Below, in pieces: positions 11,796 to 43,400 of a stretch of DNA of 64,000 nucleotides (within the stretch, counting starts at the first letter, position 1; each line of letters begins with the position of its first letter). The stretch covers positions 248,001 through 312,000 of the forward strand of contig DF236972.1 of the NCBI GenBank assembly GCA_000708835.1, read 5' to 3'. Both the position numbers and the translations under genes were made by a program. Source of the stretch: Klebsormidium nitens (lineage: Eukaryota; Plantae; Klebsormidiophyceae). The notes below the pieces were generated by a model that was not told where the DNA came from, searched no databases, and was given only the letters and a program-made list of their open reading frames with translations.

Positions 11796-12031
11796 TCAAG
11801 CGTCCCGGCTTTGCTCCTCTAGCAAGCGCCGCTCGCGCCGCTTTTCGCGCCAGTCCCTAAACCAGGCCCGGAACAAAATGAACGCGATGCAAGCCAGCAG
11901 AACGGCGACCGCGGAGATGAGAACGGACGCCACGGCAATGGCCGCGGTTCGGACGTCCTTGGACGGCGGCAGCACGCGTTCACCGGTCGGGACTGTGTCC
12001 TGGGGGCCGCGTTGGACGATCAGGAACGTGC
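11796..12031 (-). CDS. Terminal exon of the giant gene: end of GPS-like motif, single TM helix, 24-aa charged cytoplasmic tail
   Basis: GTFLIVQRG...RTAAIAVASVLISAVAVLLACIAFILF-RAWFRDWREKRRERRLLEEQSRDA*; acceptor TTGCAG at 12033-12032. Confidence 0.9.
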
Positions 12032-15000
12032 CTGCAAGGGCGGAAACGCAATTCGTTCTCTCCTTTATCACCTTTTTGATCCTTAAAACAGTGAAATTAA
12101 AATGATGGGCAGCATCTCAGTTGTTGAAAATAAAGTCGGCCTATAGAAACTTTGCAATGACTGCACCCGATCAGCTTAAAGGGACCCGTCGTTTATCCGT
12201 AACGCCTCGGCGACCAGATAACCCATATATCCGCAGTTTGGGTCGCTGAATTGGGTACCACGTAACGAATTTTCAGGCGACACGAGGCCAGGATGTGATG
12301 GGAAGTGGCCGCCGCGGTACGACATGAGGTAGACGCCCTCTTCGGTTGTAACTCAACAATGATCTCAAGAGCCTTCTTTGCTCTTCCTTATTAGCAGAAC
12401 GAGTACCCAAAGGGATTCCCTTTTTCCCCAGAGTGTTGTTTCTTGGAAGAAGGTTCAGGCTTTTGAGATGCGAATGCGGTGCGTCGGCAAGACTTCGCCG
12501 TGCCGTTTGTAGCGGCTAATTATCGGCGGGAAATCGGAAAAACCTTACGGCCGTACCACAAACTGCATCATCCACTGGGCCATGAGAAATTTAAAGACCG
12601 TCAGGTTTCCCGTTCTAGCCTGAAAGTTGAGCGGTCCAGTCGTCGGAGAGTCCGAGTCGTCTTTGTCCTAATTCCAAGCGTCTTACGTCACAATTCTCAG
12701 ACATCCAAGCATCTGACGTCACGACTCCTCACCTGCGCTAGTCGGCGCACACGTGGCCGTTCCTCCTACGACCTTCAGCAGAGTCGTTTGCCGGGACGTC
12801 GTTCCGGTGAGCGACGTTCCGTTCTGCTGCAACTCCCAGCATTCCGTCGTTCCGGGCGCCCCCGGAATGTACAACTGCGACTGGAGCGGAACCGTCACCT
12901 CGAACGGATGCGCTGTGCAGCTGAGCGCCACTGGGGTGCCGGCGCTGCTCGTAAACAACACGCTAACCATGCTGCTAACCACCCGAACGCTGCCTAACCC
13001 CAGCAGGTTAAGCCCGGCCAGCCCCTGAATCGCCGCCGAGTAATCAATGTGGGTTACGATCACCGACAGCTGGTCGGTGCAGTCCGGGTTAGCCTTGCAG
13101 CAGTCCCTTAACCCGCCCGGTAACGCAACGGTCGCCTGCGAAGCCGTCGACGCCTGCGTGGTTGCGGTTCCCGAGACCAGGGGGGTGTTAACCGGCTGCT
13201 GCTCCACTAACCACCGCCGCCTGTGTGGCGTCCCCACGGCCTGCGAGCCTTGCCTTTCGGTGGCCGAGTCCCAGCGGTTAGTGCTTAACCCGCTTGCGAA
13301 CTGGCGCCCCAGCCGCTTAAGCAGCTGCCCGTTGGTCTCGGCGATCTCGCGGGCGCTGGCCCCGGCCAATGTGCGGGTGCCACGTGTCAGGTCCTCGAGC
13401 AGCGCGGAGTCCTCGTCGGATTGCAGGAGCGTCCGCCTCCGGTAACGGTTGTTGCTGTAGTAGTTATTGTACGTGTAGTCGTTATCATATCGGTCGTTGG
13501 ACGAACCGAGCGAACAGCTGTAGCTGGTCTTGGCCGGCAATGACGTCGTGTCGATGGTCTGCAAAATGAGAACATGACGTCAGCATCGAACGGTGTGGAC
13601 CCAAAAGCGTGGGCCTTCGCCGTGCTGATGTTGTGCTTTGCTGTCGTTCTACGATCTAAGAGCTACGTGGCGCTACAGAAGCGAGCCACTTGTCACCAGC
13701 TGGCTGCCAAAAGACCTTCCCATCCAAACTTGCAGACGCTAGTCAAGACGAAAGCCGCAGGTGTAATTCTCAGGGAGAGAAAAGGCGCTTCAAATCCTCC
13801 TTCAAGGTGCACGACAATCTATTTGCAGACACCAGAGATGATACGCAAGTCCAGGAGTGATGACGTCAGGAGCGGAACTAAAGCGCAAGCAGGGAATGCC
13901 ATCCACGACAGCATGATCGCCGTTGAGAAGATCCAACACTTGCAATCGCCCAGGGGCCAGTCGAGTTGCACTTCTCGTATCTGAGCCTGGGTTTGCGCCT
14001 TCCTTTCAGAGCTAAGTCCACTTTCTCATGACAACACACGTTTCCCCAACAGCGTACTCCTTGCCGACCAGCATCTAGTGACCTCACCTGGTACGTCATG
14101 CTGCACGACTGCGACTGGTAGGTCCCGGCGGGCTCCCCCGGGCACTTGTTCTGCGCAAACGCTTGGGCCAGGTAATACAGCAAACCCTGACCGGTCCAAA
14201 GGGTGCGTAGGCACCCCCCCGTGCCGTCATCATCGTCGTCATCGTACCTTCTTGAGGGCGACCGCGAAGGAGAGGGAGACGGGGATTTGGTCGCCGGTGG
14301 GGACTTGGGACGGGGAGGGGGAGGGTGTGGGGAGATCGTGGGGACGGGGACGGGGTAGNNNNNNNNNNNNNNNNNNNNNNNNNNNNNNNNNNNNNNNNNN
14401 NNNNNNNNNNNNNNNNNNNNNNNNNNNNNNNNNNNNNNNNNNNNNNNNNNNNNNNNNNNNNNNNNNNNNNNNNNNNNNNNNNNNNNNNNNNNNNNNNNNN
14501 NNNNNNNNNNNNNNNNNNNNNNNNNNNNNNNNNNNNNNNNNNNNNATCTGGACGGGGACGGGGATGCGGGGGGGACTTTGAAGGAGATGGGCTTGCGGGG
14601 GGGGACTTGGACGGGGACGGGCTTGCAGGGGGGACTTGGAAGGTGATGCGCTGGGGGGGGTTGTTGTGGAAGGCGACGGGCTTGGCACGGGGGAGCGGGA
14701 GGGGCTCGGCGATTGCGATGCCGAGGGGGAGGGGGAGGGGGACGCGCTCGGGGATGGGGAGAGCGAAGGGGAAGAAGAGATGCTTGGGGCGGGGCTTCTG
14801 CTCGGGGAGGCGGAAACGGAAGCGCTGGCGGACGGCGACGGAACCGCGGAAGTGCTGGGGGAGGGGGTCGCCGAGGGAGAGGCGGAGACGCTGGGCGAGG
14901 GGCTCCGGCTCGGGGAAGCGGAAACGGAAGGGCTCGCGGAGGGCGACGGAACGGCGGAGACGCTCGGGGAGGGGGTCGCCGAAGGAGAGGGGCTTGTTGA

Positions 15001-18000
15001 CGGGGCGGGAGAACTAGAGGGGGATGGGGAGGGGGAGGGGGAAGAAGACGGAGAGGGAACTGGGGATTTTGAGGGAGAGGGGGAGGGGGATGCTAGCGCC
15101 GACGGGCTTGCGGAAGGGGGGGGCGAGGCGGATGGGCTGACACTGATTGCAGGGGAGGGGCTGAGACTGATTGACGGGGACGGGCTTGCGCTTAGAGAGG
15201 GGGAAGGGGAAGCGCTTGCCGAGGGGGACGGAGAAGGGCTGAGAGACGGCGAAGGGGAAGGGCTTCGCGAGGGGGACGGGACTGCGCTTGTTGAGGGGGA
15301 GGGAGACGCGCTAAGGGAAGGTGACGGAACCGCGCTTGTTGAGGGAGACGGGCTTGCGCTGAGGGAAGGAGACGGAGTTGCGCTTGTTGAGGGGGAGGGG
15401 GAAGCGCTAACCGAGGGGGAAGGGCTTGGGGTTTTTGAAGGGGAGGGGGAAGAAGATGGCACGGCGGATCGTGAGGGAGAAGGGGACGTCGAAGGAACTG
15501 GGGACTTTGAGGGTGAGGGGGAAGGAGACGGGGACGGGTAGAGCGTTCCGTAGCAATAACCGTATCCTTGGGGACAAGCCGAGCTGGTAATGTTGATGCT
15601 CTGCAAGTGGGCTTGGTTAAGGAGTTGACCCAAAACGGAGATGATGGTCGCCGCGATGTTCTGGTCGTTGGCGTACGCGCTCCGGCTGACGTAACCCGAG
15701 ATGGTTATCAGCGCGTTCTGGCACAGCGCGACCGTGCTTTGATCCAAGTCACTGTAGTAGTTGACCAGCTGCTTGAAGCTCGCGAGGAGCGCTAGCAAGT
15801 CGCACTGATCGCCCGAGGTTTGTAACACTAACAGGAGCGCTTGCGCGATCTGCTGCTTGATCGTGGTCGTGTTGGGAGGGTTGGCGGGATCAAAGTTCGA
15901 GAGACCCCCCCAGTCGCAAGTCGGGTTGGAAACCGTGACATACGGAACAGGGGAACGAGACGGGGAGGGAGACGGAATGGCGGAAGGGGAAGGGGAGGGA
16001 CTTCGTGACGGGGAGGGGGAAGTCGAGGGTGCCGGGGAGGAAGAAGGAGAGGGGCTTCGCGAGGGGGGGGGCTCGAAGAAGGGGTTGGCGAAGGGCTTCT
16101 GGAGGGGGATACCGAGGGAGCGGGAGATGCCGAGGGGGCTGGAGAAGAGGATGCCGAAGGGGGGGGGAGCTTGAAGGAGAGGGGCTTAAGGAGATAGAAG
16201 GGGAGGGCGAACTAGAAGGGGCGGGAGAGGAGGAAGGACTTGGGGAGGGGGAAAAGGAGGGTTGCGCGGAAACGGAGGGGCTAGGAGATGCTGAAATTGA
16301 AGGTTGAGCGGATTGTGATGGGGAGGGGGATTCGGAGGGGGCTGGCGTGGTGGAAGGAGAAGGGCTTGACGAAGGGGGGGAGAACGTAGAGGGGAAGGGA
16401 GTGGGGAGGGAGAAGGAAGAGGGGAAGGGGAATGGAAGAACTAGGGAGGGAGAGTGATGCGCAGAAGGAGATGCGGANNNNNNNNNNNNNNNNNNNNCGG
16501 ACGGCTCGGCGGAAACGGAAGGGCTGGGCGAAGCGGACACGGAAGGCTGGGCTGACAGCGAGGGAGAGGGGGAGGGGAGGGGGAGAGGGAAGCGGAACTT
16601 GACGCCGAGGGGGAGGGTTTGGCTGAGATTGAAGGGGAGGGGGAAGGGGTTTGGGAGGGTTGAGGCGAAGTTGACGGGCTTGGGGGGGGAGACGTAGACG
16701 CAGAGGGAGAGGGTTCCGCAGACATAGATGGGGAGGGGAGGGGGGAAGGAGATGGCGACAGATCCGGGAAGTAGATCGGGGGAACGGGGAGCGTATTGAG
16801 TCCGCAGGAGCATGCGGTAGTGGCCGCGAGAATTGCGACGGGGTCTCCGGTTGCGAGTGCGGCCTGGAGCGCATTTAGACAGCTGGCGGTGACCTCTCCG
16901 GGGGGGACGTCCACGTGCTTGACTGTCACCCTCGCGGCGACGCAAATCTGCGGCAAAGTCGCAGGCGGAGCTGAGCGCTGGATGACCTAAATCTGACGAT
17001 CCAGAAGAACGCATTGAGCTGAATAATAATCACAGGCGACTTATCTGCAGTCACTGATCTTGATTCAACAGCTAAGCTGGTGAGTTTGTAGTATAAGTGA
17101 GGACTCCAGATACAAGGTAGGCCGTTCTGCCAGGAGTTGGAAGGATGGGCGTATTCGATCTAAACCCTGATGGAATGAAGGTCGTAACAGCTTTCGAAGT
17201 TGGCAAGCAGAGCAGTTTATCTCGAAGCATGTGTCACGATTGAAACAAGCTTTTGTGGAGGGGTGAATTCTATTCACGTGTGCCGACGCATCTTCACAGC
17301 CGTCCGAATGAATGGAGCACCGAATCCTTCCTTCGACAGTAGAGACCACTTGGGGAGCACGGTTCCAATAATGAACGACGTTGCCTGCTACGCCGCCATA
17401 GCCAACCTTTGCGGCCCTTACCTGCGAGAGCCACGCGTCCGAAACGCAGGCGTACACCGTCCGCGTATCGTTGTTCGCCGCTAACCCGGCGGGAAGCGTC
17501 GCAAACGTATACGACGGCAGCTGGCTGTTGGAAACGAGCGCGATCTCTAACCCGTCGTCGTCGACGTAACCGATTTCGTAACTGAGGGGCGGGAAGTCGG
17601 TGGCCCAGCTGGCGAGTGACGCAGTGTATGACGTCAGGCCGTTGTCCCATCCCTGGGCGGGAGTGACCGTGAGGCAGAGCGAGGGGGCGTTGCAGACCGG
17701 GCCACGTGGCACCTGGAGATTGGCGGTTTGAGAGTCAGACCGTGTAGCTGGAAGATAAATGGCAACGGTAAGGTACTTGCTTCCTCGTCACATTGTCTCT
17801 GTATTCGACAGTTACAGATGGAATATAAGGAGGGTCAATCGAGGTATGGCAACTAGAGTGCCGGTCTAGAAGGGGCACGGAAGCGGCTAAAAAAGGCTAT
17901 GTTGAAACAGCGCGCTCGAAGGGGCCAAGACTGTGAAAGATGCGCTTGTGCGGACCGAGAATCATCCAAAGCCGTGGTAAACAGAGATGCCGAACTCAAA

Positions 18001-21000
18001 TACTAGTAGCGACATAACGGATCTCGTGAGAGGCTTCTTGCTGCAGAACTCAGCCACGTGGCTTTATGAAGCTAGGTTATGCTGTGCTTGGAACCACAGA
18101 TTTCTGCCAAAAGGCTTCCGCAACGTCTTCGCTTTGCTAAGAAGTTGACGTCACATGCTGCCTCGCATATTGAGGGACGAAGTGTCTGAATAAGGTCCTA
18201 GGGTTTCAAGGTCTTAGGGTTTAATTATGGGGAAAACAAACTAAGTGTGTTGGAAGTCGGTACCGCACCTGAATGGTATACGAAGCCGTTCCGACCAGCC
18301 CCGTATACACGTCCGTGATGTATACGATGACCGTATACGAGTACCCCGGCTCCAGGAACGCTGGGCTGATCGCCAAGTACTGCGACAGCTGCCCGGTCGT
18401 CGCGATATCGGGGTTGGTTAGGTTAAGGTTCTGACAAACCCAGCGGTAACCGATCGGTCCGCCGCTGGAAGCGAGCACCTGAGCCTGGAAGCGCGCTGGG
18501 CGTGTTGGGTTGATCCTGCAATTAAAGAAGGACAACGTATCAACCATTTGCAGCGAACCCAACATTGCTTCTGAGGTTTGGGTTAGTGTTTAGTCGTTTG
18601 CTAGGCGCCAATGTCCGGAACTCTGATGAACTGTTGCTCAACTGTCCGGAGGGGAAGAAAAGAGGCGACCGGTTTTTAAAAGTAGACGGGGATCCAGTCG
18701 GAATCATTCCGGGCGTCTTTTGCAGACTCGGAATGTGAGACCCCGCTTGAAAATGACCGTCTGAGATCGTCAAATGGCCCCTCTATCTGCCGGTGACGCT
18801 GACGGTATCACAACGTGTATTGTTCACAGCACGTGCAGTACCGGGGTTTGGGTCAGACTCGCTATCGTTATCCACTGCTTGTCGACACTAACCAAGATGT
18901 CCACCTTGACGATATGGACGCTTCAATACTAAGGTAGGGCAGCCCGTCCTGACCAACCAGGTTCAATGGAACCCTAAGATTAACTACAATTCTCAGAAAA
19001 GTGAGGCTTCTCACGCTTGCAGCACAAGGATCTGGCCGATGGGCGGGTTAGTGTAACCCGCCACGATCCGGATCGTAACCGACGCCGTGGCCTGCCGCGC
19101 GCACTGCCCGTTCACACACGCGCCCTTCCCAGCGAGCGCGTAGAATGTGAATACGCCCGGCTTCAGCGTGTAACGGGGGACGGTGAAAACTACCGACGAA
19201 GCGTCTGGTGACGTGGCGTTGGCGTTACGGAAGCAGTCGCCCCCGCTGCTGTCAACGCACCGCCAGAAGATCTTGAAGGCTGCAAAAAGATAGGGGGAGA
19301 CGGTTTGAGGGTTGATGAGGGGGCGGGCCAATAGCATATCGAGCGTGCCTGCAGACTAGAAGAGACGGGGACTCTCTACAACAATGTTTGGAACTGATGT
19401 TTTAAGAATAGTTGATGAAATGTGGACTGAGAGCTAGCGACGAGTGGATCAGTCCAGACACCTAGCAGACGGCTCCGAAGAACAGTCACAGTAATTTAGA
19501 GTCAAAAGAAGCGACGTCGCAGGAAGTATTCCCCCCCGTCGCTCTAAAAAGCTTTAAAAAGACAAAAGAGTTCAGTCTTCGATCGTACAAAAGATTGTAC
19601 GTAAGTGCAGGCAGGCACGACTGCCCCAAAAAAACCTCACAGATCGCCACGTGCCGACCGCTCACATCAGACTACTCGCTTTTGAAACAAACAAAGCGGG
19701 AAATCTCACCTTCAAGAAGATTTAGGGGATCGTCCGGATCGGAAGCGTCCACAATCAGCACGAGTGCTTCGCTATCCACCGCGTCACGTGACCCTCCTCT
19801 GACGACAGCAGTGACGTCACTCGGGACGACGACTAGATCGACGTAAGCGTAGCCAATCGGGTCGTCGAACTGGGGACCCAGCGTGGTGTCAACGACCCTG
19901 GCCTGTAACGCGAGGCTGTACTTGCGGCCAGGCGTTACGCCGGGGGTGTTGGCCGGGATAACAAGGTCTTTGAGGTTGGTCTTGAGCTGCAAAAATAAGA
20001 GCAGGGTATAATTCTCAGAGGTAGCATGAGCGCTTCAAGTTGGAACGTCGAGAAAGACCCTCCAATCCCACTGCGAGTACTTTCAACAGCAGCATGGCAG
20101 CTCAAAAACACATGCCTTGTCCAACGGCTGGGTTAGTGCGTTATGATGAAAAGCACTTTCGCTCTGTACGATCAGCCCGGCAAGTTTTGCTGTCCTCACG
20201 ACTGCCTGTGCATAGGTGAGGAACTTGCTCAGTACGATGTCAATGGAAAGTTGAGGACCGAGCGAAGCCCGCAATGCTTGCGGACATTACGCACTCTAGC
20301 TGTTCAGATTCCCGGACAGATCGACAGGCGTCCTCCATTGTTACTACAGTTGTTTAAAAGAGATTGAGAACTCAGAACGAAACGACCGGCAAGTGGAACG
20401 GACCTTAGGGCAAGAATACATAACGGCAGACGAGCCGGAAAACGAGCCGGAAAACGAGCCGAAATTTTCTGTCACCGCAAATCTGCACGTACATTGTGAA
20501 AGGCCCATTGGCAAGCAAACGCAACAATCACCGACCGAAACACGAAGCGACATGGTCTCTCACCCCATCCATTGAGAAGTTCGTCGACCCGTTGACGAAG
20601 GTCCACTGATACGTGAGCTGCGACGCGGCTCCGCAGAGTGGCGCGTAGACCACCGCGGTCTGGAGAATCGTTGCGACCGGTAGCTTGATCGACCGGGGGT
20701 TAGCCCCGACCACGCTCATAACCGGGATCGGGTCGGCCGTGCGGGTAAACGTCCAACTGGTGTTGGTCATCTGGGCGAAAAGGAAACGGTAGCTTTTAGG
20801 AGCTGAGGGATGGTCCAACGGACTGAGTCATGCCGGGATTGTGGAAGTGATTGAACGGGCGACCGGAAGTTGGCAGAAGAGTGCACCGTTAATGGAAGTA
20901 GTTGCTGACGGTTTACGTGGGGGTTACGACAGGACTCGCAGCAGTAAATGATTGCATTCGTGGTAGTAAGCGAAGCCTCGATGCTCCCAGGGTGCTAGAG

Positions 21001-24000
21001 CTGATGAGAAGAACAAGGGAATCGAAACCGTAGGGTCTGGCTATTGTAAGGGTTGTTCTCTGCATTTCACCTCCCAAAACAAATGCAGACGTCAAGAGCT
21101 ACCTTACTGACATTCATCATTCACTGATGAGCTTCGATCAAGGATGAAGTTCTCACTGCCTTCGATAATGCTCCGAACAGTTTAAGGAGGCATCAACAGC
21201 TCATTTGGTGCGTGCTCGACACCGGGATTAGGCTGCCCCGTCTGCTAAGGTAGGCGTTAACAATGTTCCTTGAAACAGAACATCCAAGAATCAGAACATT
21301 CAAAAAATGTTGAGGCAGAGTCGTCGTTTCAGGTTTGCGTTCCCACCTGACCAAGGAAGCTCGCAACTGTCAGCGCCACCGTGTAGTTCCCGGGGCCCAA
21401 GTCCCGGCTGTCCAGCCACAGCTGCGTGGCCCCTTGCTGCGCCGCCACCTCATCATGCGCTGACATCAGCGACACGACATCGGGCGCGCTCGCGAGCGTC
21501 CAGTAGTACTTCCCGAGCGGACGCCCGGACGGGTCGCTCGAGAGGGACGCGTCCAAAACGACCGCGGTCGCCGCATTAACGGCCGCGCAGCGCGCGCCAA
21601 CTAGAGTGGGGCCGCTTATAACGGCGATCGGTAACGGTGGGTTGTCGGGCCAGTCAACCGTTACAGTGACGTTTTCGTCGAAAGGAGTGCCGGTCCCGGC
21701 CTGGATGAGGCCGTTCGCGAGGAGCGCGATCGTGTTGCCGGGAACTAGAGTGGCGGATGTGCCCAGGGTTACAGTAACCGTGGTGCTGGTTATGGTGCAG
21801 ACCGCGCCAGATCCGAGGAGGTTGCGGGTGGCGATTGCGAAGATGAGGGCGCAGCCGGACCCGCTCAGATTCGGGTCGGGCATGGAGTTAAGGCTGACCA
21901 GAACGCTCTTGCAGTCGCTGCTCATCTGTAAAGGAGGAATCTGGGTTAGTTCACTGAACCGTTGAGAATCTAAATGCTTTCCCCTCGAAGAACTTGGGAG
22001 TGCAGATCAATGTTTCGAGACTTCCAAATGGACGAAGGTGAAAGCTGCGCCACCGTTCCAGGTCGAGTTCGATCTTGGGGTGAATCGCTTCGAGGAGAAG
22101 AAGCCGTCACGGATTGCTAGGACAGAAGTCTGTTTCAATTGAGGTTAAAGGGTTCAATTTCTACGCACTCGACCCAATGTTCGCTAAGCTTAGGGTACAA
22201 AGTCATACGTTCAAGACGCAAAACCTTTTCTCTTTAACAGGAATCGAAGCTCGACGTTCTTCCTATATAGCCGCTGTCAAGTTGAAGCACACCTCTCTGC
22301 GGGGCCCCCGAGACAAGAAAAATGGTCGACACGACCACGCTTAGCATTTTAGCGTCAAGTTCAGACCCCGCATGAACTCAGCAGAATAGATCTTAGGAGA
22401 GTCTGGAATGCGCCTCCCTCATTTTCAAACCCGTAACCTCGACCGTGACGAGGTAAAAGGGTGTACCTCACCGCATCACCAATTTCGAAGTACTTGCTAT
22501 CGTCCCTCGACAATTGACTACGATCATTACGTATCAAAGCAATGGATGATTGTTTCACCGTACCTTTGCCCCTGTCATGAACGGCTTGACCGCCTGGCAC
22601 GTGCCCCCACACGGCATGCATCCCGCCACTCCCGTCCCCCGGTCACAAGAGCAGACTTTGCACCCCCCCGGAACGGGAGCACAGATTCGATTCACCGGAC
22701 AGTCCGCACTCGTCCCACACGCGGACGCTGCCGGGACGCCTTGGCTCGCCCCGCCGGCAGCCGCCCACGTGTCGCAGTTATTGACGCACGTGCCGAGGCA
22801 CGCGGAGGAGCAGCCACGCGTCCCCGTGAGCGGGTCGCAGGCGCACTCGCGCGTGCAGTTCCCGCCCGCGAAAAACGCGCTGCAAGTTTGGGACCTCGCG
22901 CAGTCGGAGTTGCCCCGGCAGAAGCAGTTCTGGGTGGAGTCGAGCGAGCCGGGCGCGCAGAAAGTGGGCGAGGTCGCGGAGAATCCCGCGCACAAATCGG
23001 TGCCGCAGAGGGCGTCGATCAGGAGACGCGCGCCGGAGTAGAGCGGGGGGAAGGACTTGGGGAGGGGGCAGTAGGTCGCGATTCCGTTGCTGGTGTTGGA
23101 GCCCGGAATGTTGAAGGCCTGCGGAACGGAAAAGGAGGGGCTTGGAACAACTAATCAGGCGGTCCGCAAGTGTGCAAGAGAGTCCCCGCTGGACCAGGGG
23201 TAAAAGCTTCCGTTCTGTCGAAACAATAGCGGAAAGCATCAGGCGGAAGAAGTGTGTAAAGGCCTATAAGCTCCGTCCGTTTTCTTTGACCGGAAGGCGT
23301 TGTGAGCACAGGAGGACTCTTTCCTTTCAAAGTGACGTCTAAAGTTTTGCACACAAGGGACGCTTTCAGGTGCTGAGGGGTGGTCAACTGTCCGCCCGCA
23401 AGAGGCGTCCCTTATATGAAAGTCTAAGTCAGTGCAAAGTAACAGCAATATCGAACTTTGGTTTGCCGAAAGATTCAAACAATCAGCAGCATAAGCCTTT
23501 CTCCGCACCTATTTGTTGAGCGGCTGACTGCACTCTACTACGCAAGGCAAGGCCGTGATAAAGTCCACGTGGCACAAACGGACGTCCCGCTTACCTTGAT
23601 ATACATGTCCAGCCCATCTTGCGCCACGTTGTTTGTAAACGCACACAGGTCAAACCGGGAGGTCGCTTTCGGCCCGGTGTAAATTGCCCCGGCCGTCAGG
23701 CCAGCCACGTTCGAGTCGAACAAGCAGCCGGAAAAGTGCCCGGTAGAAGACACCGCCAGCGAAACAGCGCCTCCGTCCCCACCGGCCGTGTTCTTCGTAA
23801 CCGTGCAGTTAACCATGGTTATCACGCTGTCAAGGTAAAGCGCGCCCCCTGAAGCCCCCGCCTTGTTCCCGGTGAATAGGCACCGGGCGAAGTTGACGCT
23901 TCCGCCGGTCGCGAAAACGGCGCCCCCGTTTCCTGTCGCATTGTGGTTAGCGAAAACCACGTTGACGAAGGTGCCAACCGAGTTGGTTAGCGAGACCGCG

Positions 24001-27000
24001 CCGCCGCTGCCGTCGGAGTCCGCCACGTGGCCGATCGTGGGCTGCCCCCAGCCGCCGACCAGCAAGAGGTTCTCCAGCCACAGCTCGCTGCTCTGCACCC
24101 GGAAAATCCGGAAGGCGTTCCCGCCCGAGATCGAGAAGCGGCACGTGCCGTTCCTTGGGGCCGAGCAGGCGCCACCCGTCAGGCGCAGCTGCGACCGCAC
24201 CACGGGCAGGGGCGACGTCAGCACGACGTCAGCGTCCAGTATGATCCAGTCGCCCTGGCTCATTGCGTACCGGAGCTGGGCTTCGGTGCTGACGCGGAAC
24301 GCACCGCTCACGAAAGGGATCACCGGGGGGGGGCAGTCTCGGAAAACTAGATTGAGCGATGAACCAGCCACTTTGAGAGTGCTCGGGTTGGGGCAGATGA
24401 AGGCTGTTCCGGCCACTCCAACGGAACCGTAGACCGGAAGGAGGAGTCCCCGGAGGAAAAGATCGTCTCCTCCGAGCACGCAATGGGCGGAATCGTAAGC
24501 GAATGTGCAGGCGGAAAGGATGACAGTTGCCCGGGGATCGACGTAAATGGCACCTGGAAGGGGACAAACCAATGCGGTTAAAATATTTTGGAGAAAGTCC
24601 GAAAAAAAAACATGCCGCTTTGGACTGGTTCTGGAACTTGAGTGGGTCATGCAACATCACATTTGGTCATTACTGGCTAGAGTAGCTGCTTCGAAGCTTC
24701 GAAGAGACATTTCTCTACCTGTGTGCAGGACATTACGTCACCAGAAGGAACCACTTCAGTCGTCTGAAAGTTCGGGCCAATGGGGAGGTTTATTCAAGGT
24801 CCAGTTTCCAACTTCCAACCCTGTCCTGTGATCTTTATATACCTGGCCGTAAACCCAAACTAGAGCGAGCACCATCGCTCACCTCCCTTGTCGTAGGCCG
24901 TATTCCCCACAAACGAGCACTCGAAGAAGTCCCCGACTGACGTCACCGCCAGCGCGGCCGCGCCGCCCGCGATGGCCGCCGTGTTGTTCTGGAACGAGCA
25001 GTCCGTCAGGTTAACGTTGCCCTCCGCGAAAACCGCCCCTCCTAGTTCGAAGGCGGTGTTGTTGAAGAAGACGCACGACATGAAGTCCGCCGAAGTTTTC
25101 CCGTCGTTGTCAACGAAGACTGCACAGAGTATGATCAAGAGTCAACGACGAGCGGACTGAATAAGAGGTTGAGTATCACGCGTCTCTGCAAGGCTCACTT
25201 GTCTCTGGGATCACGTATTCTTAGATGCTATGGCTGCAGCGAATTGAGTCTTTAAGACAAACATCCGTGGTGATAACAGAACCATCTAGCCGAGCGGCCG
25301 CCATTAACATCTTCAGGAAAGAAAACAAAACAATTCAATGGCATTATCATCGAAAACAAAACAATAGGTCTCAGGGGATGATCTACTCGGAGCGGCTGCG
25401 CACTTCTAGGCGATTGACAGGGAAGGAACTACTTGACTTAAAAGCACTCATTCATCGCGGGGTTTCAGAGAGCATAGGAAATGCTGAATGAACTTTCTCC
25501 CGTCCAGATTTTGCTAATGCAGAGTGATGGTAAGATCCAACCATGTCATTGTTATGGGTCGTATTCACTACGCGCTTCCTTACCTGCGCCTCCGCTCTCC
25601 CACGCCAGATTCTCTGAGAAGATGACCTCACGGAACGTCACTGTCGCACCGCCAATCACCCGCACGGCTCCCCCCTCCTCGGTGCTGTTTCCTGCGTTGA
25701 ACTCCAGCCCGGTGATTAAAACGGTTCCCCCCGAAATGGTGAGAATCTGGCTGGAGTACCCGGCGCTTATCATAGGGGGGCGGCCCATCGAGTGCGAAAA
25801 GTCGGGGCTGCCTGACAGAACCAGGTTTGCGGTAACGGTCGGCAACGGCCCCAACTGCATCGCGATATCCGTCTCGAGGACGATATCGTATTGGCCGTTC
25901 GCCAGAGCGTATCGCAGCTGGGCCTCGGTGGTGATGAGGAACGTCCCTCCGGACGGGAGGACCGGCGGGGGGGGGTCGCAGCTGTCCCTGAACACTCTAT
26001 AAACCGCCCCCCCGTATTTGAGAGAAGTCGTCGCCGGGCAGTAATCAACGCCACCGTCGGATGCAGTCCCGGGGAAATCTCGAGCGTAGAAGTCGGCCCC
26101 GCTTTCGAACGCGACGTTCAGGCTGAACGTGCTTCGCGTCAGCTTTGCGTTGCTTTTGTAGCCAATGCTCAGGCCCCCCCCGAAAAGTTGCGCCGTGTTG
26201 TTGGTGAAGAAAGTGGTAGCGAATTGCGCAGAGCTGGAATCGTGCCCCGCAAAACCACCCCCGGAGTCCCCAGCCCGGTTCGAGGAAAACTCGCAGTCCG
26301 AACCGCTGACGATTGACCGTTCGGCGAAAAGGGCGCCACCGTAAACCCCAGCAGTGTTACCGTCAAACAGGCAGGACCACAGCTGTAGCCGGCCGTAACG
26401 CACTTCGACGGCGCCCCCGTTGTACGTCGACCGTCCGTCAAAGAAGACCACGTTTCGGAGCGTTCCGGTGCCGCTCTTAGCATAAAGAGCGGATCCGCGG
26501 AACGCCTTGCCGTCCGCAAGAATCAGAGTGTCCAGGAAGAACGGAATTCCTCGAACGGTGAAAATTCGGTACAAGCCGTTGCCGGAAACGGAGACGGGCC
26601 GAACCGGCCCGGCTTGGGTGGAGATATTCACACCGACGATTTGGACACTGTTCGTGATTGCGGGTAACGGGCCCTGCAAGACGATGTCTGCAGTCACGAC
26701 GATCGTGTCCGTTCCGTTCCGGACGTTCGCATAAGCGATTGCCGTCCGCAGCTCCCAGTCAGACGCGACCTGGTAGGCGCCGTCCAACCGGCGTGGCAGG
26801 ACTGAGCTTGGACACGTGGCAAGCACTGAAACGCTCGCGGTTGCCCCGTCGAAGGTGAGATTTGCGGAACAGGCGCAAAGAAGCGCCTGGACGGTTTGTG
26901 TTGACCCCGCGTCACTACGCAGGTCATTGCTTAACCCGCCCTTCCCCGGGCCGACTTGGCTTATGGTGTTGTTACCAAAAGTCGAGTTGCTAACCCGGAC

Positions 27001-30000
27001 GTGACCCCCTGGGTTAACTTGCAACCCGCCCCCGGTGCTCGCTGCCGCGTTGCCCCAGAACGTGCTCGACTCGATGAAAACATAACTGGAAGTCTGCGCA
27101 AGAACCGCCCCCCCCGAAACGTTTGCCGCGTAGTTACCGGTGAACTGAGACCCGCTAACCTGCGCTAAACTGCCCGTTGGAACCGTAACCGCGCCCCCGG
27201 AACTCCCCCCCCAGTTGCCACTGAACGCACACCCCTGGAAGGTCGCGAGCCCGTCGATGAAAACAGCCCCCCCGGAAATGCCTGCGGTGTTGTTCGCAAA
27301 AACGCAGCCCACGAAATCCGCTCCCCCGTCTGTCACGTAAACGGCCCCCCCGTATAGCCGCGCACTGCTATACGAGAAGGTGACGTCAGCGAACGTGCCC
27401 CAGCCGTCGGTGATGGAAACAGCACCCCCGGTGGAGTTGCTGAGCCCCCCCGTCAGGGTCAGGTTCGCGATGCTGACGTCAGCCCCGAGCGCGCGGAAAA
27501 TGCCGTAACCGGGCGCCGCCAGCAGGACGAACTTGCCGTCGGACGCGGCCGGGTTGGGCGCCCCGGTCACGATGACGTCAGCGGTGACCGTCGGCAGCGG
27601 TCCGCTGAGCTGGACGTTGGACGTGATGACGACTTTCTTCGCGTTGTTGTTGAGGGCGGAAACGAAGTCCGTCTCGGAAGTGACGTAGTACACGCCGTCG
27701 ATTTGGGCCACCGCGATCCCGCACGCTTTCGTCAGGATCTTGGCGACCGCTCCGCCAATCACGGGGCGACACGTCAGCGGGCACAGCTCCATGCGCCCGA
27801 GCTGATCCTCCGAAGGCGAGTCGACGAGAAACAGGTCCGGGCCCGTTGCGTTTGAGGCCCTGTTTCCGGCGAAGGTGCAATTGTTGAAGCCGCTTTGGCT
27901 GGAGAGCTCGCCATACACCGCGCCGCCGGGGCCTCCCAGACACGTGTTGTTTCTCAACTGGGTGAATGCGAAACCCGCCTCCGCGAATTGCGGAACCACG
28001 ACCGCGCCCCCCGCGTTCTGCGCCGTGTTCCCCACAAACCGGCAGAACAGAAACGTGGTCATGCCGTAAACCCAAACGGCGCCGCCGGAACCAGACGCAG
28101 CGTTCAGAACGAAGTCGCAGCTTTCGAATGCGGCGTTCCCATCAACCATGTAAACCGCGGACCCGTTTCCTAACGCAGAGTTCTGCACGAAACCCACGTT
28201 CGTAAACTCGCCGCTGCCTGTTGACGCGCCCAGGTTTTCGATGTAAACCGCGCCGCCGTTATCCCCGGAATACCCCCCGTACAAATCCAGGTTAGCCACG
28301 GTTAACTTTGCCCCCCGAACGTAGAAAATGCGGAAAGTGTTGAGCCCGGAGATCCTGATGCGCGCGGCGAGGGGGGGGTTGGGCCAGTCCGGCCAGAGAC
28401 CGTGAATGGTGACGTCACTGGTGATGATTGGGAGAGGCGCGAAGAGGGTGACGTCGCTGACGAGCAGGATGTCGGCGGCGCTCTGGTTGATAGCGTATGC
28501 CAGCTGGGCGGGCGTAGAGACGATATATATGCCTCTACCGATGGGGATGACCGGGGGGGCGCAATCTGCGAGTCGCAAGTGCAGCAGATTTCAATCTTGA
28601 GAAAAAACAGGGCCTTGATTGATATATGAGAACGTAGTTTTGCTTACCGAGCGACGGGCACTTTCTTTCAGGCGACTCGAAAACAGATCGCTTTGTCCTA
28701 TAAAATTTGCTCAAGAAGGAACCGATGAAGGCACTACACCCTCAACGCACACGGCTCCAAATCCATGCCACACTTCTTTTCGCCTCCGCAACTTGCTCGA
28801 GACTGCTTCCGTCATGCAAGAAATAATCGTGCGCTTTGTCGAACGTTTCCGTCAGAACCTCTACGGAAGTCCGCTCAGATATGGTGCAGGAATATTCTTG
28901 ACAAGAGCGCCGAGCAGACGCTTTGTGCGCGCGCACCTGTGGGGAAGACGGTGGATAGCGCTCCAGAGATCTGCGCGCCCACGTCCGCCGGGCAGAACTG
29001 GAGCTGGCCGGAGTACTGGGAGTCTCGATACCCGCGGTTGTACAGATCACCGCCCTTCACAAACAAATACAAATTTAGCGTTGCTTCTCCGAGCAATGTC
29101 CGACCAGGAACTTCAGCTTCTCAATTGTAAAGTTGGGAGAATTGCAGGGCTCCCCTTTCAGAAGGAGCGCGTAAAGCTCGAAAGATGTCCCCAGAGCCAA
29201 AATCAGTCGACGATGGAGAACCGTTCTTCCAGTATCTGCGAGGTGTTCCACCGGTTTCTGAATAACGTCCTTTTGCTTCAAGGAACACGTTGCAAAGCCG
29301 CTTCATGAAACTCAAGCAGATCCGATTCGTCCAACGTGCTTCTTTTCCACAGACGTGGCAAATGAGGTGAATTTTTCGATACCAGTCGACTTATGCTACC
29401 TTGATTTCCAAGATCCAAAACGAAGGGTTTGAACCTCACGGTGCTGGCGTTGTTGTTCAAAAACTGCGTATATGTAGAGTTGACGGTACTCGTGTGGTCC
29501 ACGTGAATTGCGCCTGCGATTGGACAACAGAAGCAATTTAAGATCGGTAAAACCCTCAAGGAAGTTCACTGAGAAAATAGGGTGACGGATGGATGTCCAC
29601 AACTTCAACCATTCCAGATTCGACCTCCTTCCAGAAAGATAACGGTGACGCTAGCCCTAAGAGCATGGCGAGACGACAGCTAGATTGACTCGATGCTGGC
29701 AAGACTACATCTTGAGAAGCTTGCTAGGTTCGAGTATCCGGCGGGAATCCATTTTGAGCCGTTTGCTTTGCGCGACGCCGATAGGCGTCGCTAGGGCTTT
29801 TGATTGCAAGGCTAATTCGACGCTTAACTCAGGGTGCAAGGTGCCAGGATACGATCGCTTGGGGGTCGCTTATCCAGATGCTAGTTAGAAAGCTCGCCGC
29901 TCGTTGCGGCTAGCGTCGGAGAATGAGAAGGAAATGAAGAAGCTCACCGCCGCTGTCAAGCGCAGAGTTGTCCTGGAAAGAGCAGCCCACGAAGCTGGAC

Positions 30001-42667: not shown

Positions 42668-43400
42668 ATTTCCAGGCCCCAGATTGGATTGCAGGTAGCA
42701 ACCATCTCAGGGTGGTGATAAGTGAGTGGTATGGGGCGAAAAGAAGTAGTCAGGGTAAATGTTACACAACGTAGCGTGCAGCTTTGCAGAGCTCGTCTGA
42801 GCTAGAGCTGACTAGCTTTACAGTGACTTCAAAAAGAGCTCATGCACAATTTCTCCACCTCTTGTCTTGGATGCTCTCAATTGGTCCTTGTTGCTTACTC
42901 TAGCTGCATGCCACCATAATCCTGTAATCTAGTTTGCTCCTTGACTAGCTCTTCAAGAGCTCAGAATATCTGGATAAAAGCATTCTAGGAAGTCAGGGTC
43001 AGAATCAAAATCTGTTCAGGAGCTAGACAGGTGGCTCCTTTCAAATCTCTCTAGAGCTCATTCAATTGAAGGCTCCCTTTTTTTTCCTGCCTCACATTCG
43101 CAACAAGTTGCTTCTGACCAGGCTTTAACTGAGAACTTGAACAGCATGATGAAGTTGACCCGCATGACCTTCTCACAAGCGACCCAGTCACTAGAAACGA
43201 AGCTCACGACAAGAGCCAGGTGGAGGAAAACGCTAACTGCACTCAGGCCCGAGCTCCAAACGCCTCCACGCGAGCTCTTAGCGACTACTAGGTAGGTACA
43301 TACCGTAAGTACTTAGCTTGGGGTACCTACTGTCCACTGTTAGTTTCAGTACGCAGAGCCTTCAATTGTACGGTTGTACCTATCTAAAAAAGTACTAATA

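What the first reader, a model, noticed from the sequence alone, without database searches (positions are those of the whole stretch)
12010..13444. Catalytically dead GPS motif paired with two RRxL processing sites
Seen only after splicing: ECWELQQNG...TATCAPTSA|GTFLIV aligns position by position to the GPS consensus C..W...C-x-C-x-H-L-T-x-F-A-V. It keeps the first C-W, one Cys and the Phe, but His is replaced by Ser and the nucleophilic Thr by Gly. Upstream lie RYRRRTLLQ (~13421-13444) and HRRRWLVEQ (~13202-13223). Established: GAIN autoproteolysis needs H-L|T/S, and RRxL is the site-1 protease (SBT6.1/S1P) motif used in plant RALF and PME pro-proteins. Inference: autoproteolysis was lost and ectodomain processing may have passed to a Golgi subtilase.
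Basis: partly seen in the sequence, partly recalled or inferred. Interest (0 to 1): 0.72.

Follow-up and report, generated by a model that had tools for sequence, protein, structure and literature searches.

The report
Algal GAIN-like domain without self-cleavage site
The last two exons of a giant cell-surface protein gene of the alga Klebsormidium nitens encode a membrane-proximal domain that probably has the fold animals use for receptor self-cleavage. It lacks the cutting residues and instead carries two conserved Arg-Arg-Arg-x-Leu tags that look like sites for a secretory protease. This is an interesting variant of a known design, and the cutting is untested.

Summary
The sequence features are real. 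RNA-derived contigs from four studies and the public annotation (KFL_000230350, Klebsormidium nitens) confirm the splice that joins ...CAPTSA to G-TFLIV. The same contigs show that this 357-aa model is the tail of a much longer transcript. The gene annotated upstream is a 3643-aa protein with REJ and beta-helix repeats.

The roughly 170-aa beta-rich module before the single TM helix gets no Pfam GPS/GAIN hit, and only near-identical orthologues exist among 1.84 billion proteins. Structure-based evidence points to GAIN subdomain B:
- The ESM Atlas model matches GPS/GAIN clusters (TM 0.64-0.70).
- A low-confidence AF2 model has BAI2 and BAI3 GAIN as its top VIA hits (Z 6.8 and 6.3).
- The superpositions place Ala279|Gly280 exactly on the Leu|Thr/Ser cleavage bond.
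- The retained Cys pair corresponds to one of the two known GPS disulfides.

The H-L-T/S positions read S/N/K-A-G in all four lineages, so canonical autoproteolysis is excluded.

Both RRRxL motifs are invariant through synonymous codon turnover inside poorly conserved linkers, and they match proven SBT6.1/S1P sites. They lie outside the sandwich. Neither cleavage nor the protease has been tested.

The scan holds unverified notes on three other GAIN-like modules in this genome.

The parts
11796..12031 (-). Last coding exon. It holds the last two bases of the split Gly codon, the terminal hydrophobic strand TFLIVQ, a 22-residue linker, the TM helix, the basic cytoplasmic tail and the stop (11798..11796).
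   Evidence: ORF and splice; joint in RNA-type contigs; P0008. The 28 residues TFL[IV]VQRG...KDVRT are almost invariant (one I/V change) in four lineages.
11871..11945 (-). Single transmembrane helix (25 hydrophobic residues). An Arg/Lys-rich tail follows (11799..11870), so the topology is type I with the N-terminus outside.
   Evidence: Sequence; weak Pfam hits are to TM peptides only.
12032..12732 (-). Intron of 701 nt, GT..AG, phase 1. It splits the Gly codon that stands at the P1' position of the GPS-like turn.
   Evidence: Skipped in contigs of all four runs. Position and phase are conserved in orthologous loci L001, L003 and L005.
12733..13558 (-). Penultimate coding exon (275 codons plus 1 base). 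In order it encodes a low-complexity N-terminus, site 1, a two-helix segment, a linker with site 2, and most of the beta-rich module.
12733..12844 (-). GPS-like segment ECW...TATCAPTSA(G). Cys244 and Cys274 (P0008 numbering) correspond to C1 and C3 of the GPS. The H-L-T positions read S-A-G.
   Evidence: Manual register confirmed by the end points of the VIA superpositions on CL1 and BAI3. Disulfide map C832-C801 and C834-C820 from PMC3321182. Variation S/S/N/N/K at the His position.
12733..13123 (-). Beta-rich module (about 135 residues here plus the strand on the last exon), proposed to be a GAIN-B-like sandwich. It is 87% invariant across four lineages and holds a conserved N-G-T sequon.
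   Evidence: Strands predicted by AF2; Atlas structural matches to GPS/GAIN clusters; VIA Z 5.4-6.8 to GAIN structures; conservation.
13208..13222 (-). Site 2, RRRWL, in a coil between the helices and the sandwich.
   Evidence: Invariant in four lineages with synonymous Arg codon changes (AGG/CGG, CGG/CGA/AGA), while an adjacent 10-residue indel and substitutions occur.
13424..13441 (-). Site 1, RRR[T/S]LL followed by Gln. It fits both RRxL and RxLL.
   Evidence: Invariant except T/S. Nearly every codon shows synonymous change, and the flanks carry indels.
13280..13417 (-). Two predicted helices between the two sites. The second one (ASAREI.ETNG.LLKRLGRQF) is nearly invariant.
   Evidence: AF2 secondary structure; conservation. 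VIA superpositions on BAI2, BAI3 and CD97 start in this helix.
13559..14087 (-). Intron of 529 nt.
   Evidence: Skipped in contigs of all four runs.
14088..14358 (-). Upstream exon. A Ser-Pro stalk runs into a conserved Cys-containing segment ending ...SCSMTYQ. The annotated start codon of KFL_000230350 (14099) is internal to it.
   Evidence: Contigs run continuously from 14088 past 14300. The frame is open upstream. The segment is conserved in L001, L002, L004 and L005.
17068..19992 (-). Exons carrying the REJ domain. Three colinear weak Pfam REJ matches lie at 19992..19675, 18565..18224 and 17712..17068.
   Evidence: profile positions 49-112, 238-311, 319-399; 12.2+21.4+16.4 bits. The annotated 3643-aa upstream protein carries an unmarked REJ hit.
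23541..28578 (-). Right-handed beta-helix / Chlam_PMP repeat region of the same annotated upstream protein.
   Evidence: Pfam Beta_helix 3.4e-12 and Chlam_PMP 1.6e-07.

Best explanation
The finding is the C-terminal end of one very long, expressed Klebsormidium nitens gene for a type-I surface glycoprotein.

Its architecture, from N- to C-terminus, is:
- beta-helix/PMP repeats
- a Cys-rich and PKD-like region
- a REJ domain
- Ser-Pro (hydroxyproline-type) stalks
- a two-helix segment
- a beta-sandwich of about 170 residues
- one TM helix
- a 24-residue basic tail

The sandwich is most probably a strongly diverged GAIN subdomain-B-like module. Like the GAIN domain of polycystin-1 and REJ proteins, it sits between a REJ domain and the membrane. 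Its last strand (TFLIV) follows a tight turn, and it keeps the C1-C3 disulfide pair of the GPS while both partners of the C2-C4 pair are gone.

At the turn the catalytic His-Leu-Thr/Ser is replaced by (Ser/Asn/Lys)-Ala-Gly in all known orthologues. The module therefore cannot self-cleave by the known mechanism and probably serves as a rigid, non-dissociating base of the stalk (inferred).

Two RRRxL motifs lie in disordered linkers on either side of the conserved helical segment and are kept by selection. The most likely reading (inferred, untested) is that they are processing sites for a secretory-pathway subtilase of the S1P/SBT6.1 type. Cleavage there would detach the giant wall-facing ectodomain from a membrane stub made of the sandwich, the TM helix and the tail. 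If both sites are cut, a conserved helical peptide of about 70 residues would also be released.
For: Gene structure and expression:
- The splice junction and a second intron are confirmed in four runs from four studies. Their contigs are 3.7 kb and 6.0 kb long and continue at least 2.1 kb and 4.5 kb upstream of 14300.
- The annotated upstream gene is a 3643-aa REJ/PMP protein that ends at an assembly gap (gaps).

Fold:
- Atlas feature search: the three best clusters all carry Pfam GPS (0.86-0.87).
- The Atlas's own ESM model of residues 148-300 matches GPS-only, 7tm_2+GPS, LAT-1 (GAIN) and ADGRG2 clusters at TM(query) 0.64-0.70.
- An independent AF2 model has BAI2 GAIN (8oek: Z 6.8, rmsd 3.7, 121 aligned) and BAI3 GAIN (4dlo_A: Z 6.3) as its two top VIA hits. 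CD97, CELSR1 and CL1 follow.
- Four GAIN entries are among the top 18 of 48,161 representative chains.
- The alignment to cleaved CL1 ends at model 240 <-> Leu837, and BAI3 gives 240 <-> Leu856. That is exactly the proposed P1.
- The retained Cys pair matches the C832-C801 disulfide.
- The distance from the turn to the TM helix is 29 residues.

Dead site:
- The site reads S-A-G, S-A-G, N-A-G or K-A-G in the orthologues.

RRRxL motifs:
- Two are observed against 0.13 expected.
- They are invariant across four lineages through synonymous turnover. The N-terminal half of the exon is only 41% invariant, against 87% for the domain.
- The proven SBT6.1 sites RRLR and RRRAL occur as a pair in the CLEL6 precursor and are cut in the cis-Golgi (PMC7162652).
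- S1P-type subtilases are reported throughout Archaeplastida in a data set that included K. nitens, whereas SBT1-5 are absent at this grade (PMC6713707).
Against: - There is no sequence-level support for GAIN/GPS. Pfam finds nothing at E<=10. A profile search against PDB sequences finds nothing. An exhaustive phmmer search finds only near-identical orthologues.
- Both structural models are of low confidence: AF2 pLDDT 40.6, with 50-60 in the domain, and Atlas pLDDT 0.49.
- Foldseek against the PDB gives no significant hit.
- All VIA Z values are below 8 and are tied within 1 unit with C-terminal sandwiches of GH51/GH30 enzymes and with ZU5 domains.
- The Atlas model also matches DUF1191 and bacterial LPXTG/SLH proteins equally well.
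- Only two helices are predicted where GAIN subdomain A has about six.
- The orthologues are close (66-86% identity in the exon), so the conservation test has limited depth.
- A third RRLL sits in the cytoplasmic tail, so the motif also arises by chance in Arg-rich stretches.
- No cleavage data exist, and I did not verify an S1P gene in this genome.
Confidence: 0.55

Rival explanations
1. The module is an unrelated, lineage-specific juxtamembrane beta-sandwich, and the GPS resemblance is coincidence. The match comes down to a Cys-Trp, one more Cys and a hydrophobic strand just before a TM helix.
For: - No Pfam, PDB-sequence or phmmer link to any GPS protein.
- VIA Z values of 5-7 are typical of common arrangements, and glycosidase sandwiches score the same.
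- The Atlas model matches DUF1191 and bacterial wall-anchor proteins as well as it matches GPS clusters.
- The models are of low confidence.
Against: - Two independent predictors both rank GAIN structures or clusters first.
- The exact register falls on the scissile bond in two different GAIN structures.
- One disulfide pair is retained and the other is lost as a pair.
- A REJ domain lies upstream, as in polycystin-1-type proteins.
- The language-model feature search gives GPS clusters as its top three.
Confidence: 0.27
2. The RRRxL motifs are functional but are not S1P sites. They could be polybasic sites for a kexin/furin-like or other protease that cuts after RRR. Alternatively they are not protease sites at all, for example basic patches that bind acidic wall polysaccharides or a partner.
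For: - Three consecutive Arg residues are invariant, more than S1P needs.
- The genome is noted to hold several unusual membrane-tethered subtilases (scan notes, unchecked).
- No cleavage evidence exists.
Against: - The Leu at +2 after the Arg run is also invariant at both sites. At site 1 so are the second Leu and the Gln. A purely polybasic site would not require these.
- RRRAL is a proven SBT6.1 site.
- RKLL tags at unit boundaries of secreted polyproteins are noted elsewhere in this genome (scan note s1-299361, unchecked).
Confidence: 0.3
3. The module still self-cleaves by a non-canonical route. It would use the invariant Thr281, one residue after the Gly, as nucleophile (register A-G|T-F).
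For: Thr281 is invariant. Some GAIN domains tolerate deviations at P2 (BAI3 has RLS).
Against: - This register has no His or other base at P2 (it is Ala) and has Gly at P1, where a bulky aliphatic residue normally strains the turn.
- It would shift Phe from P3' to P2'.
- The structural register puts Ala279, not Gly280, on the P1 Leu.
- BAI3 with RLS was crystallised in the uncleaved state.
Confidence: 0.03
4. KFL_000230350 is a stand-alone 357-aa gene, as annotated, and is unrelated to the REJ gene upstream.
For: The public annotation models it separately.
Against: - The model has no signal peptide, and its Met is internal to an exon whose frame stays open upstream.
- Contigs of four runs continue upstream of the annotated start without a break, by at least 2.1 and 4.5 kb in X1 and X6.
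- The upstream model stops exactly at an assembly gap.
Confidence: 0.05

Closest known systems
Polycystin-1 / sea-urchin REJ protein family (REJ domain followed by a GAIN domain with a GPS next to the membrane)
   Same: A REJ domain lies upstream. A sandwich of about 170 residues sits directly before the first TM helix, with a GPS-like turn and a hydrophobic last strand. The turn-to-TM distance of about 29 residues is similar to that of polycystin-1 (from my own knowledge).
   Different: - There is a single TM helix and a 24-residue tail, with no PLAT domain and no 11-TM channel-like part.
- Ser-Pro stalks are inserted between the REJ domain and the sandwich.
- The N-terminus carries beta-helix/PMP repeats.
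- H-L-T is replaced by S/N/K-A-G.
- Pfam GPS is not detected.
Cleavage-resistant GAIN domains of animal adhesion GPCRs (BAI3 with RLS, BAI2 uncleaved, CELSR1, and receptors lacking HXS/T)
   Same: These are the best structural matches (8oek Z 6.8, 4dlo_A Z 6.3, 8vy2_A Z 5.8). Their GAIN fold is kept without autoproteolysis. BAI2 is instead cut by furin elsewhere in its ectodomain.
   Different: - The animal domains keep all four GPS Cys residues, both Trp residues and usually a Ser/Thr at P1'. Here P1' is Gly, and only one Cys pair and one Trp remain.
- There is no 7TM partner for a tethered agonist.
- The helical subdomain A is reduced to about two helices.
Plant S1P/SBT6.1 substrates (CLEL6/GLV1, RALF23, pectin methylesterases, bZIP17/28)
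   Same: The motif form R-R-(R)-x-L sits in an exposed lumenal segment. Two sites occur in one precursor, as with the RRLR plus RRRAL pair of CLEL6, which is cut in the cis-Golgi.
   Different: - The known substrates are small pro-peptides, pro-enzymes or type-II membrane transcription factors, not the stalk of a protein estimated here at about 4,800 aa.
- Cleavage is untested here.
- The protease was not identified in this genome by me. I rely only on a literature statement.
Notch S1 (furin) site in the juxtamembrane negative regulatory region, and the GPR126 furin site
   Same: A convertase rather than self-cleavage cuts a juxtamembrane ectodomain (own knowledge; compare BAI2).
   Different: In Notch the cut lies inside a folded domain that holds the two halves together. 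Here both motifs lie in disordered linkers outside the sandwich. A test of whether the helical segment binds the sandwich gave no answer.
DUF1191 (PF06697), single-pass membrane proteins of land plants
   Same: A structural match to the Atlas model at TM(query) 0.65 over residues 148-290. The overall layout of domain, TM helix and short tail is similar (own knowledge).
   Different: There is no sequence similarity, and no paper was found that links DUF1191 to GAIN. This is a lead only.

Membership tests
GAIN domain / GPS motif (Pfam PF01825, PF16489) | Significant match to the GPS or GAIN profile | tested here: not met
   No GPS/GAIN hit even at E<=10 for the exon, the spliced protein P0008 or its sub-ranges. 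A profile search against PDB sequences was empty.
GAIN domain / GPS motif (Pfam PF01825, PF16489) | Subdomain B: beta-sandwich of about 170-180 residues directly before the membrane, whose last strand follows the GPS turn | tested here: inconclusive
   Atlas ESM model TM(query) 0.64-0.70 to GPS/GAIN clusters. The AF2 model has BAI2 and BAI3 GAIN as top VIA hits (Z 6.8 and 6.3), in exact register at the scissile bond. Both models are of low confidence, and unrelated sandwiches score within 1 Z unit.
GAIN domain / GPS motif (Pfam PF01825, PF16489) | Subdomain A: bundle of about six helices preceding subdomain B | tested here: not met
   Only two helices are predicted, separated from the sandwich by a linker of about 55 residues. 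A further helical stretch at 15540-15828 lies beyond a Ser-Pro insertion and has no GAIN hit.
GAIN domain / GPS motif (Pfam PF01825, PF16489) | Four conserved Cys (two disulfides, C1-C3 and C2-C4) and two conserved Trp in the GPS | tested here: not met
   Only C1 (with an adjacent Trp) and C3 are present. C2, C4 (Pro instead) and the second Trp are absent (disulfide map). Losing one pair as a pair is compatible with descent from a GPS.
GAIN domain / GPS motif (Pfam PF01825, PF16489) | His-Leu|Thr/Ser/Cys at the turn (general base, strained P1, nucleophile) | tested here: not met
   Ser/Asn/Lys-Ala-Gly in all orthologues.
GAIN domain / GPS motif (Pfam PF01825, PF16489) | Autoproteolysis with the two fragments staying associated | not testable with these tools
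   Needs protein biochemistry.
Polycystin-1 / REJ family | REJ domain (PF02010) | tested here: met
   Three colinear sub-threshold matches on successive exons, summing to about 50 bits. There is a precomputed unmarked REJ hit on the annotated 3643-aa upstream protein.
Polycystin-1 / REJ family | PLAT domain and multi-pass (11-TM) C-terminal part | tested here: not met
   One TM helix, a 24-residue tail, then the stop. The RNA contigs agree.
S1P/SBT6.1 substrates | R-x-(hydrophobic)-L or RRxL motif in an exposed lumenal or extracellular segment | tested here: met
   RRRTLL and RRRWL lie in predicted coil with low pLDDT, N-terminal to the TM helix. The form is the same as the proven RRRAL site.
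S1P/SBT6.1 substrates | Motif conserved in orthologues | tested here: met
   Invariant in four lineages with synonymous codon turnover, inside a region that is 41% invariant. The depth is limited to close relatives.
S1P/SBT6.1 substrates | An S1P-type protease present in the organism, and cleavage at the motif | not tested
   The literature reports the SKI-1-like clade throughout Archaeplastida in a data set that included K. nitens. I could not search this genome, and cleavage needs an experiment.

The most novel reading that the evidence does not exclude
A streptophyte alga has rebuilt the two-fragment receptor principle. A GAIN-derived juxtamembrane module has lost self-cleavage, and an S1P-type Golgi subtilase cuts at two conserved RRRxL tags. 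That cutting sheds the giant wall-bound ectodomain, releases a conserved helical peptide of about 70 residues as a signal, and leaves a sandwich-TM stub. The near-invariant 28-residue juxtamembrane segment would be the functional (tethered-ligand or second-cleavage) element. The fold may be the ancestor of the land-plant DUF1191 proteins.
Probability: 0.1. Interest if true: 0.75.

Novelty: new variant of a known kind. Interest (0 to 1): 0.42.

Why it matters
GAIN domains are regarded as an ancient eukaryotic invention, but they are studied almost only in animals and their close relatives. I found no paper that treats them in the plant lineage.

A REJ-plus-GAIN-like surface protein in Klebsormidium, a land-dwelling relative of plants, would extend the polycystin-type ectodomain design into streptophytes. 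It would show what remains of the fold when self-cleavage is dispensable: one disulfide, the buried last strand and the position next to the membrane.

The conserved RRRxL pair gives a concrete, cheap test of whether S1P-type processing of cell-surface proteins predates land plants, which have no SBT1-5 counterparts at this grade. If it is cleaved, this would be the first large adhesion-type substrate for that protease.

On the practical side, the public annotation splits this gene at assembly gaps and should be merged.

Tried and rejected
- **Single-sequence AF2 of the exon:** pLDDT 39, unusable.
- **AF2 with a 7-row orthologue alignment:** still only pLDDT 40.6.
- **Foldseek against the PDB:** nothing significant; BAI2 GAIN appeared only at rank 13 with E 0.18.
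- **Atlas shape search with my AF2 model:** only TM 0.35-0.42. Hits were mostly bacterial wall-anchor proteins, with a Cercozoan GPS cluster in row 4.
- **phmmer and profile searches against PDB sequences:** no hits.
- **Exhaustive phmmer against 1.84e9 representatives:** only two orthologue clusters and one spurious LRR-like hit. No deeper alignment could therefore be built.
- **Two metagenome scans for more distant orthologues:** nothing found. One attempt failed on alignment format.
- **Complex prediction of the sandwich with the inter-site helical segment:** no verdict (score 0.01). This is evidence neither for nor against binding.
- **Misaligned alignment:** one MAFFT alignment (A5) put the orthologues' TLL.V.GG strand on TFLIVQRG. 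I discarded it in favour of A6.
- **HMM-HMM comparison with a genuine GPS alignment:** not done. No GPS protein was available by reference, and I did not type one from memory.
- **Exon joining:** The only joined sequence used is the public annotated protein P0008, returned.
- **Stand-alone 357-aa gene:** rejected.
- **ZU5 relationship** (hits): rejected as a relative, because ZU5 is a cytoplasmic domain and scores no better than GAIN.


Full report
**What is there**

The window is eukaryotic. The gene lies on the minus strand.

The penultimate exon (13558..12733) ends ...ECWELQQNGTSL...TATCAPTSA plus one base. A 701-nt GT..AG intron follows (12732..12032). The last exon starts at 12031, completes a Gly codon and reads TFLIVQRG..., then a 25-residue TM helix, a basic tail and the stop.

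The joined form I used is the public protein P0008, 'hypothetical protein KFL_000230350 [Klebsormidium nitens]'. It was returned and read, and it has exactly this junction.

Contigs of four runs from four studies skip the same 701 nt and a second intron of 529 nt (13559..14087), so the splice is real and the gene is expressed.

**It is the tail of a giant gene**

- The annotated start (MTYQ, at 14099) lies inside an exon whose frame stays open upstream into Ser-Pro repeats.
- The contigs run on past 14300. One is 3.7 kb and one 6.0 kb, which leaves at least 2.1 kb and 4.5 kb of further upstream transcript.
- In the NCBI record the next gene upstream is a 3643-aa protein with Pfam REJ and faint Chlam_PMP hits. 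It ends at the assembly gap at 16478-16497.
- My own scans find colinear REJ pieces on three exons, a PKD-like piece, and strong beta-helix/PMP repeats.

The full architecture is therefore: beta-helix repeats, a Cys-rich/PKD region, REJ, Ser-Pro stalks, the module in question, one TM helix and a short tail. I estimate about 4,800 residues in total.

**Is the module a GAIN/GPS domain?**

By sequence, no:
- Pfam gives nothing at E<=10.
- The PDB sequence searches are empty.
- An exhaustive phmmer search of 1.84 billion representatives finds only two clusters of close orthologues.

By predicted structure, probably yes:
- The ESM Atlas holds this exact protein. Its model of residues 148-300 matches clusters carrying GPS alone, 7tm_2+GPS, LAT-1 with GAIN, and ADGRG2, at TM(query) 0.64-0.70.
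- The feature search ranks three GPS clusters first.
- An independent AF2 model built from a 7-row orthologue alignment is of low confidence (pLDDT 40.6, with 50-60 in the domain), and Foldseek finds nothing significant.
- VIA-align nevertheless puts BAI2 GAIN (8oek: Z 6.8, rmsd 3.7, 121 aligned) and BAI3 GAIN (4dlo_A: Z 6.3) at ranks 1 and 2. CD97, CELSR1 and CL1 follow.
- Four GAIN entries are among the top 18 of 48,161 representative chains.

- The superposition on the cleaved N-terminal fragment of CL1 ends at model residue 240 <-> Leu837.
- The superposition on BAI3 gives 240 <-> Leu856.
- Araç et al. name these two leucines as the P1 residues of the cleavage site (PMC3321182).
- The same paper gives the disulfides as C832-C801 and C834-C820. 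The alga keeps the equivalents of C801 and C832 and has lost both C820 and C834, a pairwise pattern expected from descent.

Against this reading:
- The Z values are middling. GH51/GH30 C-terminal sandwiches and ZU5 domains score within one unit.
- The Atlas model also fits DUF1191 and bacterial wall-anchor proteins.
- Only two helices stand where GAIN subdomain A has about six.
- C and W are adjacent rather than C-x-x-W, and the second Trp is missing.

I put the GAIN-B-like reading at about 0.7.

**Dead site**

The His position is Ser, Ser, Asn, Asn or Lys in the sequences found. The Leu position is always Ala and the Thr position always Gly. Without a hydroxyl or thiol at P1' the known mechanism cannot start.

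An invariant Thr follows one residue later. That register lacks a base and a bulky P1, and it disagrees with the structural register, so I give non-canonical cleavage about 3%.

Cleavage-resistant GAIN domains are well known in animals. Examples are BAI3 with RLS, BAI2, and receptors lacking HXS/T. BAI2 is cut by furin elsewhere in its ectodomain (10.1101/2023.03.12.532270).

**The RRRxL motifs**

- Site 1 (RRR-T/S-LL-Q, 13441..13424) and site 2 (RRRWL, 13222..13208) lie in predicted coil. They flank a two-helix segment whose second helix is nearly invariant.
- Two RRxL are observed where 0.13 are expected.
- In four lineages (window, L001, L005, and L003/L004; 66-86% identity over the exon) both motifs are invariant while nearly every codon shows synonymous change.
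- Their surroundings have indels and are 41% invariant, against 87% for the sandwich. This is purifying selection on the peptide motif, within a shallow sample.
- The motif form equals the proven SBT6.1/S1P site RRRAL. That site occurs together with RRLR in the CLEL6 precursor and is cut in the cis-Golgi (PMC7162652).
- SKI-1-like subtilases are reported throughout Archaeplastida in a survey that included K. nitens. SBT1-5 appear only later (PMC6713707).
- Unchecked scan notes mention RKLL tags at unit boundaries of secreted polyproteins in this genome.

Caveats:
- A third RRLL sits in the cytoplasmic tail and is lost in one lineage.
- RRR would also suit a kexin-type enzyme.
- Nothing has been tested at the bench.

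**Mechanism, with shown and inferred steps marked**

- Shown: the splice, expression, the domain order, the absence of the catalytic triad, and conservation of the motifs.
- Inferred: a GAIN-B-like fold that stays intact as the base of the stalk.
- Inferred: subtilase cleavage at one or both RRRxL tags in the secretory pathway. This would shed the wall-facing ectodomain, leave a sandwich-TM stub, and possibly free a helical peptide of about 70 residues.

Because the sites lie outside the sandwich, this is not a functional replacement of GPS cleavage, which keeps the fragments together. Whether the helical segment stays bound to the sandwich could not be decided (no verdict).

**Novelty**

I found no paper treating GAIN domains in Klebsormidium or in the plant lineage. 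The elements themselves (REJ plus GAIN, uncleavable GAIN, convertase or S1P tags) are all known. I therefore class this as a new variant of a known kind, of moderate interest.

The scan has first-reader notes on three other GAIN/GPS-like modules in the same genome. I could not check them.

Noticed in passing
window 14088-16498 and L006:7602-10001: The public annotation splits one transcript into a 3643-aa REJ/PMP gene, an 11-aa model, an antisense 365-aa model laid on the Ser-Pro repeats, and the 357-aa KFL_000230350. The breaks coincide with assembly gaps at 14359-14545 and 16478-16497.
   Followed up: partly
window 11946-12029 (minus strand): The 28 extracellular residues between the GPS-like turn and the TM helix (TFL[IV]VQRGPQDTVPTGERVLPPSKDVRT) show a single I/V change across all four lineages. 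They are better conserved than the TM helix or the tail, which suggests a binding or second-cleavage element.
   Followed up: partly
P0008 residues 148-290: The Atlas model matches a land-plant DUF1191 cluster (PF06697) at TM(query) 0.65, as well as it matches GPS clusters. No paper links DUF1191 to GAIN, so this may be a plant relative of the fold.
   Followed up: partly
window 12032-12732; L001:2249-2804; L003:1255-1631: The phase-1 intron splits the Gly codon standing exactly at the P1' position of the GPS-like turn. Its position and phase are conserved in all orthologous loci, although its length varies from about 380 to 701 nt.
   Followed up: yes
window 12078-12465 (inside the intron): Short low-depth contigs lie within the intron. 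Contigs of about 550-570 nt from three runs share only 18-24-nt pieces with it (12197-12220, 12302-12319) and otherwise run on unlike sequence. They are probably fragments of a dispersed repeat.
   Followed up: no
window 12761-12784 versus 12009-12029: The strand before the turn (TLLKVVGG) and the strand after it (TFLIVQRG) resemble each other enough for MAFFT to misalign them. This is worth remembering when aligning orthologues that lack the last exon.
   Followed up: yes
window 31860-33017 and 33500-42700 (minus strand): Further upstream there is another Ser-Pro block preceded by the same 'GPLP...ITG' repeat head as the beta-helix units. Beyond it lie the 4-Cys modules noted by another reader (s1-321896). 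Whether they belong to the same gene was not examined.
   Followed up: no
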